A stretch of 64,000 bases of DNA, taken from contig NC_047075.1 of assembly GCF_902459465.1 (NCBI RefSeq), forward strand, positions 14,508,001 to 14,572,000, written 5' to 3'. The translations under genes and the position numbers were made by a program. Every line of letters starts with the position of its first letter. Position 1 is the stretch's first letter. This DNA is from Asterias rubens. Lineage: Eukaryota. A model generated the notes under the pieces. It worked only from the letters and a program-made list of their open reading frames with translations, made no database searches and had not been told where the DNA came from. Shown one piece after another: positions 41,061-47,819 of this stretch.

Positions 41061-42867
41061 GGTATTTTCCTGAATTGTATAGATGTGGAGCTACTTTTTG
41101 AGACCTATTCCTTTACATAGCACCATGAAAACTATAGTACATTTTGTTAATATCTTAGTGTTGTGTTTTATATAAAAAAAAACCAGTATGGACATCTCTG
41201 TCTGGATGATAAGGTTTTGCAGCCAACTGTTTTTGTCAAACAATAATTTTGCTAACAGAGGAGTATTTAAATCAGAAGAAGGAATATCAGATTCAGATTC
41301 AGTAAAGTTTGTTTAGCTCTGATCAGCAATCTCAAATGATGTTCTTGTTGCTTGCTTGTAATACTCCTTTGCATGGTAATTTTTTAATTTTCATGTACAG
41401 GTTCTCAGCATTCCACAATTGAAGATGTAGCCAATCAATCAGATGACGAGAATCCAGATGATGAGAAACCAGATGAAGAGAATCTAAATGAATAGAATCC
41501 AGAAAGCTTCATCATTGAAGAGTCAGTAGGTAACGACAATGCCGAATTACTTGATCAGTTAGATAATCCTCCCGAACAGAAAGCACACAGGTCAAAAAAT
41601 AGGATGGTCAAACTAAAGCGTAACAAAAGTCTATCATATTATTCTGAAAAGTCTCACAAATTCATCGAGGGTAGGAAAACAGTGCGCAATCAAATGTGTA
41701 CAGGGAAAGGTGTAAATATAAGCTAAGTTGCACTAAATTTGAGTGATCAGGTAGTAAAGTCTTTAAGAAAAGACTTCTATGAAGCAGGAAACTTGGCTCT
41801 TTAGAGGGAGTACATAGCGCGACATATCAGTTACACTGTTGTCAGTAAAAGTCACAAAAACAGACTTAAATACACTCTTCCACATCCATTCGTCCCAGGG
41901 GGAAGTGTTACAAGTTTTCAGGACAACATTTTTGTGTTCACTTGCAATATCGGACCGCCAGGTTCGTACTGTTCTGCACAAGAAAAGTAGACTAACTGGG
42001 GTACTAGAGAGAGAAAAAAGGGATGGCAAACAAAACCAACAGCCTCACAAGAGGCGTAGGATTCTCCAACACCTCAATCGCTTTCCCCGTGTAGAATCTC
42101 ACTACTGTAGAGCATCCACTAAGTGGAATTACCTCTTTGCAGAACTAACAAGGAAGAAGATGTAAAGGATGTTCAAAAAGGATCGTCCTGATTGTGGATC
42201 GTTTTCTCTTTATAAGAAAGTAATAAGAGAACAAAATCTGAAAATTCACCGGCCAAAAAAGGATAAATGTGGACGATGCAAAACATTTCGTCAATGTAGT
42301 GAAGTAGAACGTCCCAAAATACCAAACCGACTACGACAGACACAGGGAAGAGATTTCTGAAGTAAGAAAAGTCAAAGATCTTAGTAAAGAACGTGCCATT
42401 GAAGACGTCTCCCACAGTTCTGCTCTTTGATTTACAGCAGAACATATACCTCCCAAAATCGAACAGGGGCAAAATATTCTACAAACGCCGCCTTGCATGT
42501 TACAATTTCACTATTTATGACTTGGCTTCTTGCGAAGGGTTCAGCTACCTCTCCAATGAAACAATCACAAAGCGAGGGGCGTGTGAGGTATCCTCTCACG
42601 TCATGGACTACCTCCAAAAACTTGACATAGAGGGTAAAGAGTCAGTCGACTTCTTCTGCGATGGTTGTGCGGGTCAAAACAAGAATTCGATCCTCCCAGC
42701 AATGTTTACAGATTTCTTGTCTAAATCGTTAAACATAAAAGTAATAACCATATATTATACTTTGAAAGCAACCATGGCCAAAGTGATGGGGATAGCATGC
42801 ACTCGGTGATTGAGCAAAACCTGGCCCGTACAGAAGTTTTCCATCCATGTCAACTATCTAACATAAT

Positions 42868-42940
42868 GGGGAGTAATGGATCAGCGTTCTTGCCGCACCC
42901 CCCGTGAGTACCCAGGTTCGCCTGGGGAAACTGATGATCC
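42868..42940 (+). ncRNA. HDV-like self-cleaving ribozyme at the LINE 5' end
   Basis: P1 GGGGAGT/ACCCCCC, P2 GGATCA/TGATCC, P3 GCG/CGC, L3 TTCTTGC, GT linker, P4 CCCAGG-TTCG-CCTGGG, J4/2 CTGA with the catalytic C at 42931; G+1 is the first base after the TSD. Confidence 0.82.
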
Positions 42941-42989
42941 AACCAGCTTGCCAAATCCTGCACCGGATCCTGGCCATGATCTCGAACAC

Positions 42990-45960
42990 CAAGAAGCAGG
43001 CAATGTCTTTCTAGATATTGGCCCTGCTGTCCGAATCCTTCAGCTCAACATCGAAGGCATCTCCGCTGCAAAGCGTGAAATTCTAGCTACCACCTGCTCC
43101 ACAGAAAAAGTTGACGTTATCTGTCTCCAAGAAGTACACGTTGGCGCTAATGACCCAAGAAGCAGACTCAAGATCGCAAACTACGACTTTGTGGCCTTCA
43201 CAGGTCATAAGCAGTATGGAAGAGCTACATATGTCCGATCTGACATAGCCGACACTGAACTTCTTGAATCAGCTGAACTCTGCGATACCATCCGTGTGGG
43301 CAGCTACAAAATCATCAACGTCTACAAACCACCTTCCATCGACTTGACTGACACTGCTTTGCCTGCTCATCAACACCCAGCTAATATATGTGGGAGACTT
43401 CAACAGCCACCACGCAGTCTGGGGTTATGAAAACGCGAATAGCAATGGAGAATGGTTGATGGAGTGGTCATCTCAACTGAACTTGAGCCTGGTCATCAAC
43501 CTGAAACAAAAACGCTCATTCCACTCTGCACGCTGGAATCGTGACTATTCACCTAACCTGTGCTGGGTCACCTCACAGAATGACCAACCACTACAAACAG
43601 CTGTACAGGTACTGGATGACTTTCCAAGGAGTCAACATATGCCCATTGTGACCCACGTTGGGATACGAATCCCACTAACCAGATCTCTACAAAAACCACG
43701 CTGGAACTTCCGTAAGGCAAACTGGACAAAATTCTCCGAGCAGCTTGAAAAGAGCATTGTCTGCATCCCCATCAAAGGGACCTCAGTGACTGAAGCATAC
43801 ACTAGATTCACCAAAGCAATCTTCAAAGCAGCCAAGGCTAACATCCCGCGAGGCTTCCGGCCTACCTACATTCCTTGCCTAGACTCTGAATGCCAACAAC
43901 TTCTCAAAGAGTTCACTAGCTCAGGCGATCCAGACACTGCCAACCACCTCATTGAGTGCCTTGACAATGCCCGCCAAATAAGATGGGAGCAAACCACCAG
44001 CAACTTGAACTTCACACACTCAAGCCGGAAGAGCTGGAACCTCATCCGCCAACTCGGCTCTAACCAACAACCGTCCAACTCAAACAGACCATCAGTCAAA
44101 CCAAATGCAGTAGCTAGCCACCTCATCAAAGTGGGGAAAGCTCCGATTGACAAACAGACTAAACATGAGACCACACTAGAATGGCGCTCCTTCAAAAAGT
44201 CAAGACCAGAAGCTGAAACCGCAACTGCAACTCCAATCACCTTAGAAGAAGTAAATACAGCTTTGAAAGACCTGAAGTGTGGTAAAGCCCCAGGGTATGA
44301 CAACATCCACCCCGAATTCCTGAAACATCTGGGACCTGCAGCAAAAAAATGGCTAGCCGCCTTCCTTTCACGAGTCGTCTCGGTGAATAGTCTTCCTAAA
44401 ACTTGGAGAACTGCTAAAACCATCGCCATCCCAAAACCTGGGAAAGACCCCAAACTGGCTTCCAGCTATCGCCCGATCTCCCTCCTCTCAATGTGCTACA
44501 AACTGTTAGAGTGGATCATCCTCCATCGCATCAAGCCAATCACAGAGGAAGTACTTCAAATCGAACAAGCAGGTTTCCGCTCTGGCAGAAGTACTCAAGA
44601 TCAAGTTCTCGCACTCACCACCTACATCGAAAACGGATACCAGCAAGGCCTAAAGACTGGCGCCGTCTTCCTGGATCTGACTGCTGCATATGACACTGTG
44701 TGGCACAAAGGTCTGCTAGTCAAAATCTCCAAAGTACTACCATGCTGGGCCGTTGACATAGTTAACTGCTGTTGCAACAACGACGGTTTCGTGTCCATAT
44801 GGGAGACACTTGTAGCTCATGGAGAATGCAGAAGAACGGCTTGCCACAAGGATCAGTACTGGCACCCACCCTGTTCAACCTGTACACAAGTGACCTCCCA
44901 GCCACTATGTGCCGAAAGTTCATCTATGCTGATGATATCTGCCTCGCCCACCAAGCAAGAACGTTTGAAGACCTCGGCACCACTATCAATGATGACATAG
45001 CAAAGATCAGTGAATACTGTAAACGCTGGCGACTTCAGCCCAGTGTGGCTAAAACAGTATCCAGTGTTTTTCACCTGCACAATGCAAAAAGCCAACAAGA
45101 GCTACACATCTTTCTCAACGGAAAACGTTTGAGCCACGCCCCCAAACCGACTTACCTTGGCGTCACCCTGGACCGTACACTCACCTTCAAACCTCACCTC
45201 CAGAAAGTAGCTGCCAAAATCCAGACCAGAAACAACTTGATCCACATGCTCGGGGGTACAACCTTGGGAGCTAAGACAAGGACACTCCGCTCATCTGCTC
45301 TAGCCCTCTGCTACTCGGTGGCTGAGTACTGTGCTCCAGTCTGGAGGAATTCTGTCCACACCGGCCTTGTCGACGTCCAACTCAACAACACCATGAGAAC
45401 CATCACTGGCGCCGTTCGCAGTACAAAGACAGACTGGCTCCCAGTCCTGAGCAACATTGCCCCTCCAGACATCCGAAGAGAGGTAGCCACATCTAGGCTG
45501 GTCTGTAAGATCCGATCCAACTCTGAGCTCCCTCTCCTCAGAGACCTTGACTTCCACCCTAGGCCTAGACTTAAGTCGAGAAACCTAATCTGGTCCAATG
45601 TCCCGGACAGTGCAGCAACAGCAGAAGATCTATGGCGAACACGGTGGCGAGACCACACCAACGTCCCCCACAAGTTCCTGGTCGCTGACCCCACCATCCA
45701 ACTTCCGGGAATGGACCTCCCGCGCGGCCATTGGTGCGTCTTAAACCGGTTTCGTACAGACGCAGGGCCGTGCCGCAGCAGCCTACACAAGTGGGGCTAA
45801 CTTGCATCTCCGCTTTGTGATTGTGGAGAACCACAGACGATGCGCCACATGATAGATGACTGCCCACTCGCTCACCTTGATGGTGGCATCAAAGCCCTTC
45901 ACCTGGCTGAGGACCCAGCCGTAAAGTGGATTATGGACTTCAAAACGAGATCTACATAGC
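42990..45960 (+). pseudogene. LINE ORF (APE endonuclease, RT, C-terminal CCHC zinc knuckle) with frameshifts and a stop
   Basis: ILQLNIEG, ICLQEVH, GDFNSHH, SYRPISLL, QAGFR, FLDLTAAYDTVWH, GLPQGSVLAP, IYADD, YLGVTLDRTL, and CDC-x7-H-x4-C after the TAA at 45798-45800. Confidence 0.92.
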
Positions 45961-46417
45961 ATACGACATCATCATCTAACATAATAGAGGATGCTAGACA
46001 CAACCCTTGCCCCTATGTAGTAAGACATGTACAAACCTCTGACATAATAGACTGTAAGTCATATGGACAAGCCATGGGCATTCTCAAATGCAGGGAAGTG
46101 GGTGATGGTAGTTCCATCGACTGGACAAAAGTAAAACAACTCAAAATTCACAAAGATCTAGCCAATGTGATTAGCTTCAAGACTTCACACACACAAAAAG
46201 AGTTTAAAACTCTTACACTGGGAAATTTGCGCAACCTCCGTTCTGCTAATAACCATACTCCCTGTCCTAAACCAGAACTGCCAAAATCCTTGTACTCCAA
46301 TAGACCTAAATTGTCAGCAGGGAAGTACAGAGATTTAATAAGTCTTTGCACAGGGTCCTGCCCAGTAGTTGCCCAACAAGATCTTGTCGACTTCTACAAA
46401 AACTTACCCCATGAGGA

Positions 46418-46680
46418 ATGATCAAAATGGTAGTCCAATGTATCTCTGACTGATGTGTCATTCAACCTATCTCTTGTGGTAACCCAAACGATTTTTCTCA
46501 GACAGGTCATCACGAAGACTAGCAGTCTGTTTCCATCACTTTTCCTGACTGTCCAAGTCTTTGATCCATAAGTGGCTTTTGATAGGATGAGTACCTTGTC
46601 TATTTCCAGTTTGGTTAATGTTTCTATTTGATGAGAGTTCCAAACCGTATTCACTTTTTGTGTCGCTCCCATAGCCAGTC
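46418..46680 (-). mobile_element. RTE-clade LINE fragment
   Basis: LSKATYGSKTWTVRKSDGNRLLVFVMTCLRKIVWVTTRDRL resembles the RTE post-RT motif YGxExWT...RLxxFEMxCLRxI...D. Confidence 0.6.
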
Positions 46681-47819
46681 CAACCGAATTTGGATGTCAT
46701 TTTCATTGCTACCAGAAACTGATGAGATGACTCCCCTAGCAAATTGTTGACCTGAAAAAGTTGCTTTCCCTTTTAGGATACAGAAACTTTTGATTTACCT
46801 TGCACTTCACATCTTTTATTACGGCGTACCACATTCGTCTTATTTAGAGATATCATTTGTTTCTATAGTTCTCCACAGAGTTCATTTGCTTACCTCAATT
46901 GTCTTTTATATTTTGAACACGCTCTTTTGTGGGTTTTTTCTTAGTGCAAGGAGTTTTTGTTATCGTAAATAAACTTCGATTTTTATGGCGTGGTTCTCCG
47001 CTTCAAACTTTCGAAGCTGGCGGGAAACTTCTAAGAAGGAGTTTTGACACTGATGTAAAAGGTCATGTGTCCATATTTGGAAGTTTCAATCACAAATAAG
47101 GAGCGGAAGGCCTGTCCAAGACCATTTGCAAATGGGGGTATTTACGCTTCATTTCTGAGGGGCTCACCAGGCAAAAAAAGAGCCCGCGCGTCTGCAGTGC
47201 CTGAAACTGATGTCGTTTATAAGTAAGATTATTTGTCGCCATGCTTTATTTATTCTGTACTTTGAAAAGACACACAGATACAAGAAATTACACACTATTC
47301 GTGCTGATATGTCCGACTACGTCACCCGGAAAACTTAACACGGCGGAAGACTGAAACCGCCACACCGGGTATAACGATGATGATGCTAAAGGAAGGGGAG
47401 GAGTGGGGTGAGTACTAAGCATAAATAATGTAGCAACCTTGCTGGGCCCGAACTGAAACCGTCACTTTATTTTAATATTAGTTTAACAATCTGATTTGGT
47501 TGCATGGACGAACCTTGTCAACAAGTTAATGGGACAAAAATAAAGACCCATGTCTACCATAACTATACATTTCTTTTTGCCCTTCACCGATGTGTGATGT
47601 TAAGCACTGTAAACACAGTGAATGTTTTTTCTTCTGCAGGACCAAAAATGCAAAGAGATAGTGCTTATCACATAGCGGTGAAGGGAAACAACACAAATTA
47701 TATTCATTTCCCCTGATGTGTAGTTTTACATCTTTTAATACCCTTCTATTGTATTGCTAATGGTATGAAAAATAAACCTGAACCTGAAACCTGAAGTCAA
47801 TGTACGTTCTATTTTTCAG

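What the first reader, a model, noticed from the sequence alone, without database searches (positions are those of the whole stretch)
42868..42940. HDV-like ribozyme forming the exact 5' end of a full-length Ingi/Vingi-like LINE
Seen: the first 73 nt after the TSD fold into the nested double pseudoknot: P1 GGGGAGU/ACCCCCC (one A-C mismatch), P2 GGAUCA/UGAUCC, P3 GCG/CGC, L3 UUCUUGC, GU linker, P4 CCCAGG-UUCG-CCUGGG with an AGUA/GAA loop-E-like internal loop, and J4/2 CUGA. The predicted cleavage site (before G42868) coincides with the TSD boundary. Established: HDV-like ribozymes process the 5' ends of R2, RTE and L1Tc/Ingi retrotransposons, and the P3/L3/GU arrangement closely resembles the CPEB3 ribozyme. 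Inference: an active or recently active self-cleaving RNA that frees the element from host or transposase read-through transcripts. I cannot say whether this family's ribozyme is already described.
Basis: partly seen in the sequence, partly recalled or inferred. Interest (0 to 1): 0.78.

Follow-up and report, generated by a model that had tools for sequence, protein, structure and literature searches.

The report
Self-cutting RNA heading a jumping gene
The first 74 bases of a 3.1-kb jumping gene (a LINE retrotransposon) encode an HDV-type self-cutting RNA, whose fold is kept through compensating mutations in over 30 related elements; this is a well-supported new example of a known trick, not a new kind of thing.

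Summary
P2 extends by one further pair, U10-A74.

- **Boundary.** An uninterrupted paralogous target site elsewhere in the genome shows the insertion begins exactly at G42868.
- **Chance.** A generic HDV-type descriptor hits this one place in both strands of the window, against 0.1 hits expected per shuffle.
- **Comparative evidence.** A covariance model found the same module just upstream of, or overlapping, the ORF start in 30-odd related elements from metagenomes and sequencing-run assemblies. All four helices covary, including P2, which was not in the model.
- **Core bases.** The catalytic-core positions U20, C22, G25, G37 and C64 are nearly invariant.
- **Rfam.** No family reaches its gathering score. 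The CPEB3 ribozyme model is the only HDV-type model that matches (18.6 bits here, 34.3 in the best relative, cut-off 35).

Caveats:
- This copy's ORF is broken by two frameshifts and one stop.
- Its ribozyme departs from the family consensus at two positions (A5·C32 mismatch, G66).
- The Ingi/Vingi label fits the architecture but could not be tested by phylogeny.
- Cleavage itself is untested.

This is a new member of a known kind. The scan holds one other unchecked note of an HDV-like fold on a different element in this genome.

The parts
42856..42867 (+). 5' copy of the target-site duplication (ATCTAACATAAT; the first ATC could also be read as tail at the 3' copy)
   Evidence: The empty-site paralogue L122 has this 12-mer once; sequence.
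42868..42941 (+). HDV-like ribozyme, 74 nt; predicted cleavage 5' of G42868
   Evidence: Descriptor scan; model R1 scores 81.4 bits; covariation; CPEB3 model 18.6 bits.
42868..42874 (+). P1 5' strand GGGGAGU
   Evidence: Pairs with 42897-42903. In the model-fitted alignment 6 of 7 P1 pairs change on both sides among relatives; in the structure-blind alignment 5 of 7 do.
42877..42883 (+). P2 5' strand UGGAUCA
   Evidence: Pairs with 42935-42941. All 7 pairs covary on an alignment whose model did not contain P2.
42884..42896 (+). P3 (GCG/CGC) enclosing L3 UUCUUGC, with U20, C22 and G25
   Evidence: P3 variants ACC/GGU and GCC/GGC occur in relatives. U20 is 33/34, C22 34/34, G25 34/34.
42897..42903 (+). 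P1 3' strand ACCCCCC. C32 (42899) makes the A5xC32 mismatch; C36 gives G1-C36 instead of G.U
   Evidence: Family consensus is U at position 32 (30/34) and U/C 16:16 at position 36.
42904..42905 (+). J1/4 GU; G37 is the predicted P1.1 partner of C22
   Evidence: C22/G37 co-occur in 31/34 sequences.
42906..42930 (+). P4 hairpin (CCCAGG-UUCG-CCUGGG) with the conserved GAGUA/GAAA internal loop
   Evidence: P4 varies in length and sequence but always forms a hairpin in relatives. 3 of 4 modelled pairs covary.
42931..42934 (+). J4/2 CUGA. C42931 (C64) is the predicted catalytic cytosine. G66 departs from the consensus A
   Evidence: C64 is 33/34, A63 34/34, position 66 is A in 30/34.
42935..42941 (+). 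P2 3' strand UGAUCCA
42876..42878 (+). First ATG of the element, inside J1/2-P2 and in frame with the APE-RT ORF
   Evidence: ORF list; ORF frame in the C21 copy.
42868..45976 (+). Non-LTR retrotransposon, about 3.1 kb, single APE+RT ORF. Broken here by +1 at 43383, -1 near 44763 and a stop at 45798-45800
   Evidence: Extent from own-genome copies; Pfam hits; indels private to this copy.
43038..43575 (+). Apurinic-type endonuclease domain (PF03372, PF14529)
44428..45170 (+). Reverse transcriptase domain (PF00078), split by the second frameshift
45816..45863 (+). C-terminal CxCx8Hx4C cysteine-histidine motif
   Evidence: Read from the sequence and from the translation of the C21 copy.
45967..45975 (+). 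(CAT)3 microsatellite tail
45974..45985 (+). 3' copy of the target-site duplication

Best explanation
Window 42868-42941 is a member of a conserved family of HDV-like (nested double-pseudoknot) self-cleaving ribozymes. These form the first ~70-90 nt of a lineage of compact single-ORF APE+RT LINEs.

Inferred mechanism, by analogy with HDV, CPEB3, R2 and L1Tc ribozymes:
1. The element is transcribed from its own 5' end or by read-through from upstream.
2. The nascent RNA folds.
3. C64, acting as general acid, together with a Mg2+ held at the U20/G25 site, catalyses attack of the 2'-OH of U42867 on the phosphate 5' of G42868.
4. Cleavage releases element RNA with a 5'-OH G1.
5. Full-length reverse transcripts therefore end at G1, which is why new copies start there, directly after the target-site duplication.
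6. The folded ribozyme stays on the RNA. The ORF's start codon lies inside it, so it may also protect the 5' end and aid cap-independent translation.

Shown here: the fold, its conservation and covariation, the core nucleotides, and the 5' boundary. Inferred: catalysis and the translational role.
For: 1. **All elements present in canonical order**. A generic descriptor finds only this site in the window, against 0.1 expected per shuffle.
2. **Relatives carry the module.** Model R1, built from 5 sequences, finds 37 matches at E<=1 (33 at E<0.01) in 85 sources. All are on the ORF strand, just upstream of or overlapping the ORF start of related LINEs.
3. **Covariation on the model alignment**. 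88.6% of cells pair, against 45-53% with slid partners. 19 of 21 pairs change on both sides, against 6-10. No shuffle of 500 reaches the observed value on any of the five measures. P2 was not in the model, yet covaries at 7 of 7 pairs.
4. **Covariation on a structure-blind MAFFT alignment of the 5' halves**. P1+P3 are 86% paired against 58-70%. 8 of 10 pairs change on both sides, against 1-3. No shuffle of 500 reaches the observed value.
5. **Whole-helix swaps**. P2 occurs as UGGAUCA/UGAUCCA, GGCAUCG/CGAUGCC, GUAAUCU/AGAUUCC, GUUGGUA/UGCCAAC and GACAGAU/AUCUGUC. P3 occurs as GCG/CGC, ACC/GGU and GCC/GGC.
6. **Core nucleotides**. U20 33/34, C22 34/34, G25 34/34, G37 31/34, A63 34/34, C64 33/34.
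7. **5' ends.**
   - The empty site fixes the start at G42868.
   - Four own-genome copies start at the same G.
   - In 16 metagenomic copies (about 14 sites), sequence upstream of the G-run is 28% identical, which is random, against 90% inside.
8. **Independent model.** Rfam CPEB3 matches the window at 18.6 bits and relatives at up to 34.3 bits, E = 1.3e-5.
9. **Precedent.** HDV-like ribozymes cleave at +1 of L1Tc (PMC3185411) and are reported at the 5' ends of R2, R4, RTE, LOA and R1 elements (PMC3774820, PMC5786205, PMC6765202).
Against:
- This copy and its near-identical sisters have an A5xC32 mismatch in P1 (consensus U32), G at J4/2 position 66 (consensus A), and G1-C36 rather than the G.U wobble of HDV and CPEB3. 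Each could lower activity.
- No Rfam family reaches its gathering score.
- A defined 5' end could equally come from an internal promoter starting at +1.
- Only about 6 copies keep any of the module in this genome, and two are intact.
- Many metagenomic relatives are copies of one subfamily, so cell counts overstate the number of independent events.
Confidence: 0.85

Rival explanations
1. The family ribozyme is real, but this copy's version is a weakened or dead relic. The A5xC32 mismatch, G66 and G1-C36 would leave cleavage too slow to matter. On this reading the shared G1 start of the young copies reflects a transcription start or an older active master.
For: - Departures from the consensus at positions 32 and 66.
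- An older 90%-identical copy on C23 has U at position 36, the G.U version.
- The ORF of this copy is broken, so it is not under selection now.
Against: The same ribozyme sequence is shared by copies 97-98.6% identical that all begin at G1, so a master carrying these bases did retrotranspose. A single internal mismatch in a G/C-rich 7-bp P1 may be tolerated; this is inference.
Confidence: 0.25
2. The conserved pseudoknot is a non-catalytic 5' module, such as an internal promoter, a binding site for the element's protein or an IRES-like element. It would only resemble HDV ribozymes.
For: In L1Tc the same 77 nt act as both promoter and ribozyme (PMC3185411). R2 protein binds its ribozyme region and the fold is proposed to aid translation (PMC6765202). 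The start codon lies inside the fold here and in relatives.
Against: The nucleotides that stay invariant are those needed for HDV-type catalysis: C64, U20/G25 and C22-G37. They are not merely the helices. Element 5' ends coincide with the predicted scissile bond. These other roles would add to cleavage rather than replace it.
Confidence: 0.07
3. The apparent fold is a chance outcome, or a by-product of coding constraint on the first ~22 codons.
For: The ORF of this lineage reads through the region. MFE folding is not better than shuffles.
Against: Compensatory changes occur in 19 of 21 pairs and no shuffle of 500 reaches the observed values. In relatives the ORF starts at a different AUG at the 3' end of the fold, so most of the module is not coding there. 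Descriptor expectation is 0.1 per window.
Confidence: 0.01

Closest known systems
Mammalian CPEB3 ribozyme (Rfam RF00622)
   Same: It is the only HDV-type Rfam model that matches. P3 is the same (GCG/CGC). L3 is nearly the same: UUCACGU in CPEB3 (sequence printed in PMC5984629), UUCUCGU or UUCACGU in relatives, UUCUUGC here. J1/4 is GU in both, and P1 is G-rich in both.
   Different: All scores are below the 35-bit gathering score (18.6 here; best relative 34.3). P2, P4 and J4/2 sequences differ. CPEB3 is a single-copy intronic element of mammals. This one heads a multi-copy LINE in a non-mammalian genome and contains the ORF start.
L1Tc ribozyme (L1TcRz), Ingi clade, Trypanosoma cruzi (PMC3185411)
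   Same: It is an HDV-like ribozyme in the first 77 nt of a dispersed APE-type LINE. Cleavage is at +1 of the element and leaves a 5'-OH. The size is the same as the 74-nt module here.
   Different: No sequence comparison could be made here. L1Tc has an RNase H domain and sits in polycistronic trypanosome transcripts. A promoter role is shown for L1Tc and untested here.
HDV-like ribozymes of R2, R4, RTE, LOA (baggins) and R1 retrotransposons (Ruminski et al. 2011, as cited in PMC3774820, PMC5786205, PMC6765202)
   Same: Same position (5' end of a non-LTR element), same presumed role (5' processing of read-through transcripts, possibly translation initiation), same fold class.
   Different: The Rfam models derived from mosquito examples and from HDV gave no match at E<=10. 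The list of ribozyme-bearing clades in PMC5786205 (R1, R2, R4, RTE, Ingi, LOA) does not include Vingi. The primary paper was not available to check individual sequences.
HDV genomic ribozyme
   Same: Same helix order, with a 7-nt L3 of pattern U-Y-C-N-Y-G-Y. A cytosine directly 3' of P4 is followed by N-R-A and then P2. The base numbering almost coincides. The HDV side of this comparison rests on my own knowledge of the HDV ribozyme.
   Different: P1.1 can have only one Watson-Crick pair (C22-G37), as in CPEB3. This copy has G1-C36 instead of G1.U37.

Membership tests
HDV-like self-cleaving ribozymes | Nested double pseudoknot with P1, P2, P3 and P4 in the canonical order, supported by covariation | tested here: met
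   All four helices covary. P2 was tested on an alignment not fitted to it, and P1/P3 on a MAFFT alignment.
HDV-like self-cleaving ribozymes | Unpaired catalytic cytosine in J4/2 immediately 3' of P4 | tested here: met
   C64 (42931) is present and conserved in 33/34 distinct relatives.
HDV-like self-cleaving ribozymes | L3 with U20 and G25 (metal-site pair), and C22 pairing with the G after P1 (P1.1) | tested here: met
   U20 33/34, G25 34/34, C22 34/34, C22/G37 together 31/34.
HDV-like self-cleaving ribozymes | G at +1 forming a G.U wobble at the base of P1 | tested here: inconclusive
   G1 is present, but this copy has G1-C36. Relatives split 16 U: 16 C at position 36, and some have A1-U.
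HDV-like self-cleaving ribozymes | Mg2+-dependent self-scission giving 2',3'-cyclic phosphate and 5'-OH | not testable with these tools
   Needs a transcription/cleavage assay.
Rfam CPEB3_ribozyme (RF00622) | Bit score at or above the curated gathering score (35) | tested here: not met
   18.6 bits for the window; 34.3, 27.7, 24.7 and 24.0 for relatives; no gathering-level match.
Vingi clade of non-LTR retrotransposons | Compact single-ORF APE+RT element without an RNase H domain (PMC13708176; Vingi-2_Gav is 3128 bp in PMC5786205) | tested here: met
   The element is about 3.1 kb. Pfam hits are PF03372, PF14529 and PF00078 only, with no RNase H even at E<=5.
Vingi clade of non-LTR retrotransposons | RT-domain phylogeny placing it with named Vingi references, as sister of Ingi | not testable with these tools
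   No labelled LINE reference sequences were reachable. PDB holds only L1 and R2 relatives, and the Atlas gave no clade names.
RTE clade of non-LTR retrotransposons | About 3.2-kb single-ORF APE+RT element with a short microsatellite tail | tested here: met
   Tails are (CAT)n here, and (AGA)n and (ACA)n in relatives.
RTE clade of non-LTR retrotransposons | No cysteine-histidine motif C-terminal to RT (from my own knowledge of the classical clade descriptions, not checked in a paper here) | tested here: not met
   A CxCx8Hx4C motif is present at 45816-45863 and in the C21 copy.

The most novel reading that the evidence does not exclude
The mammalian CPEB3 ribozyme, whose origin is unknown, descends from the 5' ribozyme of this LINE lineage. 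That lineage is possibly Vingi, a clade the papers read here record in amniotes: hedgehog, anole and crocodilians (PMC5786205, PMC13708176). The P1-P3-L3-J1/4 core of some family members differs from CPEB3 by only a few bases and scores 34.3 bits on the CPEB3 model, while no other HDV-type Rfam model matches. A lesser novel reading is that this is the first HDV-like ribozyme documented for the Vingi clade. That would imply the 5' ribozyme predates the Ingi/Vingi split.
Probability: 0.1. Interest if true: 0.75.

Novelty: new member of a known kind. Interest (0 to 1): 0.42.

Why it matters
HDV-like ribozymes are an established way for promoter-poor LINEs to cut themselves out of read-through transcripts. 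This finding adds a well-populated family, supported by covariation, that Rfam does not capture at its thresholds.

- Members occur in this genome, in many environmental assemblies and in a sandfly.
- The ORF start codon is embedded in the fold.
- If the host element is confirmed as Vingi, it adds a clade to the published list and suggests the module is ancestral to Ingi plus Vingi.
- It could also explain why the first ~74 nt of a Vingi element survive as a unit in a crocodilian SINE (PMC5786205).
- The close match to the CPEB3 core gives a concrete candidate for that ribozyme's retrotransposon ancestry.
- Compact Vingi and RTE elements are now being engineered as gene-insertion tools (PMC13708176), so a defined 5' processing module is of practical interest.

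Tried and rejected
- **Rfam at gathering thresholds over the whole window:** nothing.
- **Plain RNAfold:** z = -0.66. It cannot model pseudoknots, so it was not used as evidence. Energies of the two nested halves are about -20 kcal/mol each against an MFE of -24.8, which is uninformative.
- **Genome-wide search with the CPEB3 model:** the window's family was not among the 12 listed. Most hits are an AT-rich ~92-nt dispersed repeat with no HDV features, rejected as chance. The top hit (L013) lacks a P1 3' strand, is single-copy and has no LINE ORF.
- **Model R1 on more distant relatives at ~48-50% protein identity (L117-L120):** no significant hit. By eye, the sandfly locus L117 has P1, P2, P4 and J4/2 but a ~36-nt insert in L3. 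L118 lacks P4 and the catalytic C.
- **L123 and L124 (pseudoscorpion, psyllid):** both copies are 5'-truncated.
- **Clade assignment:** PDB sequence search, the protein Atlas and Pfam at lax thresholds gave no clade-level information.
- **Papers not held:** Ruminski 2011, Kojima 2011 and a 2015 review. The supplement with the Vingi-2_Gav 5' alignment is not held either.
- **Transposase upstream:** no Pfam support.
- **Not used:** the large representative-protein search, structure prediction and complex prediction. The proteins are plainly APE+RT, and nothing in the claim rests on them.

Full report
**What is in the sequence**

Window 42868-42941 reads, 5' to 3', as follows:
- P1 5' strand GGGGAGU
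- J1/2 AA
- P2 5' strand UGGAUCA
- P3 GCG, L3 UUCUUGC, P3 CGC
- P1 3' strand ACCCCCC
- J1/4 GU
- an internal loop with the hairpin CCCAGG-UUCG-CCUGGG (P4)
- J4/2 CUGA
- P2 3' strand UGAUCCA

This is the order of an HDV-type nested double pseudoknot. P2 can be extended by one pair, U10-A74. P1 has one A5xC32 mismatch, and its first pair is G1-C36 rather than G.U.

A generic HDV-type descriptor was run over both strands of the window. It required:
- a 7-bp P1 with at most one mismatch
- a 3-bp P3
- L3 of pattern U.C..G.
- G after P1
- a 6-7-bp P2
- a C 3-5 nt before the P2 3' strand

It hits this site only. Three of 30 neighbour-preserving shuffles gave a single hit. Minimum-free-energy folding is uninformative, because it cannot form pseudoknots.

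**The host element and its boundaries**

Own-genome searches show that homology among copies runs from 42868 to 45976, about 3.1 kb. The window lies on contig C15 of a 418-Mb, 150-contig eukaryotic assembly.

The element encodes one long ORF with an apurinic-type endonuclease (PF03372, PF14529) and a reverse transcriptase (PF00078). There is no RNase H hit even at E<=5. It also has a C-terminal CxCx8Hx4C motif and ends in (CAT)3.

In this copy the ORF is broken by three changes:
- a private 1-nt insertion at 43383
- a 1-nt deletion near 44763
- a stop at 45798-45800

The best copy, on C21, has one internal stop. Copies are 97-98.6% identical to one another.

The first ATG of the element (42876) lies inside the ribozyme and is in frame with the ORF.

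The element is inserted in another dispersed repeat. A paralogous uninterrupted copy of that repeat on C19 carries ATCTAACATAAT once. In the window the same 12-mer flanks the insertion on both sides. The insertion therefore begins exactly at G42868, which is the predicted scissile bond.

Other copies in the genome:
- The C21 and C7 copies begin at the same G. The C7 copy has 8 extra bases between the duplication and G1.
- The decayed C1 copy also begins at that G.
- The C20 copy lacks the first 6 nt.

**Relatives and covariation**

A word-based protein search with the RT half found thousands of relatives.

- DNA was fetched for several relatives.
- One metagenome scan with an alignment of N-terminal halves gave 80 loci.
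- By eye, loci at 50-65% protein identity carry a homologous module upstream of the ORF, with compensating changes.
- Covariance model R1 was built from five sequences with P1, P3 and P4. It found 37 matches at E<=1 (33 at E<0.01) in 85 sources.
- All matches are on the ORF strand, next to or overlapping the ORF start.

Pair counts on the model alignment, with P2 added as a pseudoknot that the model did not contain:

| Measure | Observed | Control |
|---|---|---|
| Cells forming a standard pair | 88.6% | 45-53% (partners slid 1-3 columns) |
| Pairs with a change on both sides | 19 of 21 | 6-10 (slid) |
| Shuffles reaching the observed value | 0 of 500, on all five measures | n/a |
| P2 pairs that covary | 7 of 7 | n/a |

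Pair counts for P1+P3 on a MAFFT alignment of the 5' halves, which knows nothing of structure:

| Measure | Observed | Slid control |
|---|---|---|
| Cells forming a standard pair | 86% | 58-70% |
| Pairs with a change on both sides | 8 of 10 | 1-3 |
| Shuffles reaching the observed value | 0 of 500 | n/a |

Whole helices are swapped between lineages:
- P2 occurs as UGGAUCA/UGAUCCA, GGCAUCG/CGAUGCC, GUAAUCU/AGAUUCC, GUUGGUA/UGCCAAC and GACAGAU/AUCUGUC.
- P3 occurs as GCG/CGC, ACC/GGU and GCC/GGC.
- P4 ranges from a 2-bp stem with a UUCG loop to a stem of about 12 bp.

One caveat applies. About half of the sequences belong to a single metagenomic subfamily, so counts of cells overstate independent events. 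Counts of pairs and of pair types are less affected.

**Core nucleotides**

Across 34 distinct sequences the positions that matter for HDV-type catalysis barely vary:

| Position | Conservation |
|---|---|
| U20 | 33/34 |
| C22 | 34/34 |
| G25 | 34/34 |
| G37 | 31/34 |
| C22 with G37 (P1.1 pair) | 31/34 |
| A63 | 34/34 |
| C64 | 33/34 |

J4/2 is C-N-R-A followed directly by P2.

The window copy keeps all of these. It departs from the consensus at C32 (U in 30/34, hence the A5xC32 mismatch) and at G66 (A in 30/34). An older, 5'-truncated copy on C23 has U at position 36, which would give the G.U form.

**5' ends in relatives**

In 16 copies (about 14 sites) of the large metagenomic subfamily, the 30 nt upstream of the P1 G-run are 28% identical on average. 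That is the random level. The first 30 nt from P2 onward are 90% identical. So in independent insertions the element starts where the ribozyme would cut.

**Relation to known families**

- No Rfam family reaches its gathering score.
- With lax thresholds the only HDV-type model that matches is CPEB3 (RF00622). It scores 18.6 bits on the window and 34.3, 27.7, 24.7 and 24.0 bits on relatives, against a cut-off of 35.
- The shared part is P1-P3-L3-J1/4. CPEB3 has GCG-UUCACGU-CGC followed by GU (sequence printed in PMC5984629). Family members have GCG-UUCUCGU-CGC or GCC-UUCACGU-GGC.
- HDV-like ribozymes at LINE 5' ends are established. L1Tc cleaves at +1 within its first 77 nt (PMC3185411). R2, R4, RTE, LOA and R1 examples are cited in PMC3774820, PMC5786205 and PMC6765202.

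This is therefore a new member of a known kind.

**Which LINE clade**

In favour of Vingi:
- Vingi is described as a compact single-ORF APE element without RNase H, sister to Ingi (PMC13708176).
- A named Vingi element is 3128 bp, and its first ~74 nt persist as a unit in a SINE (PMC5786205).
- This element is 3.1 kb, has no RNase H, and has a 74-nt 5' module.
- It carries a C-terminal Cys-His motif and a PF14529-type endonuclease. From my own knowledge these fit the I/Jockey group better than RTE.

In favour of RTE:
- similar size
- a single ORF
- a microsatellite tail
- documented HDV-like ribozymes

I put Vingi-like at roughly 60-65%. [quoted passage not shown] A confirmed Vingi assignment would add one.

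**Mechanism**

The inferred sequence of events is:
1. The element is transcribed from its own 5' end or by read-through.
2. The nascent RNA folds co-transcriptionally.
3. C64 and a Mg2+ held at the U20/G25 site catalyse cleavage 5' of G1.
4. Element RNA is released with a 5'-OH.
5. Full-length cDNA ends at G1.

The start codon lies within the fold. It is at J1/2 here. In relatives such as L026 and the sandfly Phlebotomus papatasi element (L117), it sits at a conserved AUG at the J4/2-P2 junction. That fits the proposed role of such ribozymes in cap-independent translation (PMC6765202).

Catalysis, and the activity of this particular copy, remain untested.

**Earlier notes of the scan**

One unchecked first-reader note reports an HDV-like fold at the 5' end of a 'mini-RTE' elsewhere in this genome (s1-180026). 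I did not examine it. Model R1 finds only the present family in the genome, so it would be a different ribozyme. Another note (s1-150168) mentions relatives in sea stars and sea urchins. That hints at an echinoderm genome, which I did not verify.

Noticed in passing
G000:C2:14141359-14141431 (L013:1501-1573): Best genome-wide hit of the Rfam CPEB3 model (26.5 bits, E 0.0125). It resembles CPEB3 along P1 5', P2, L3, P4 and J4/2, but lacks about 6 nt, including the P3 3' strand and much of the P1 3' strand. It is single-copy, with no LINE ORF nearby.
   Followed up: partly
L015-L024 (e.g. G000:C3:2479112-2479203): An AT-rich ~92-nt dispersed repeat gives weak CPEB3-model scores (18-21 bits). It has no HDV-like features and looks like a chance match to a common repeat.
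   Followed up: partly
window 42760-42867 and 45977-46290; L122 (G000:C19:12421131-12421726): The LINE is inserted into another dispersed repeat. A paralogous copy on C19 is uninterrupted and serves as an empty site. A further repeat at window ~46124-46802 has ~90% identical copies on C17, C18, C19 and C7.
   Followed up: partly
L010 (G000:C7:2818531-2822026): In this copy the P4 hairpin is replaced by a run of about 17 C. Eight extra bases (AGTACTTG) lie between the 11-bp target duplication and G1.
   Followed up: no
L117:1352-1507 (Phlebotomus papatasi, GCA_024763615.2): A ~50%-identical LINE has the same P1, P2, P4 and J4/2 layout, with the ORF's AUG at the J4/2-P2 junction. It carries a ~36-nt U-rich insert inside L3. 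Whether that is a natural expansion or damage to this copy is unknown.
   Followed up: partly
alignment A5, positions 21 and 38 of the ribozyme: The second potential P1.1 position is U/U in 13 sequences and C/C in 16, with 5 mixed. The two pyrimidines change together. Most of this could be a single event separating two subfamilies.
   Followed up: partly
L115, L116 (G000:C13:12359013-12359089 and 12486019-12486095): Two decayed copies of a related ribozyme share identical flanks, so they lie in a segmental duplication. They show CpG-to-TpG changes in P3.
   Followed up: no
L026:113, L028, L033 and other relatives: A conserved AAUGAU at the J4/2-P2 junction supplies the ORF start codon in several relatives (for example protein P0033). 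In the window lineage this AUG is out of frame, and an AUG at J1/2 is used instead.
   Followed up: partly
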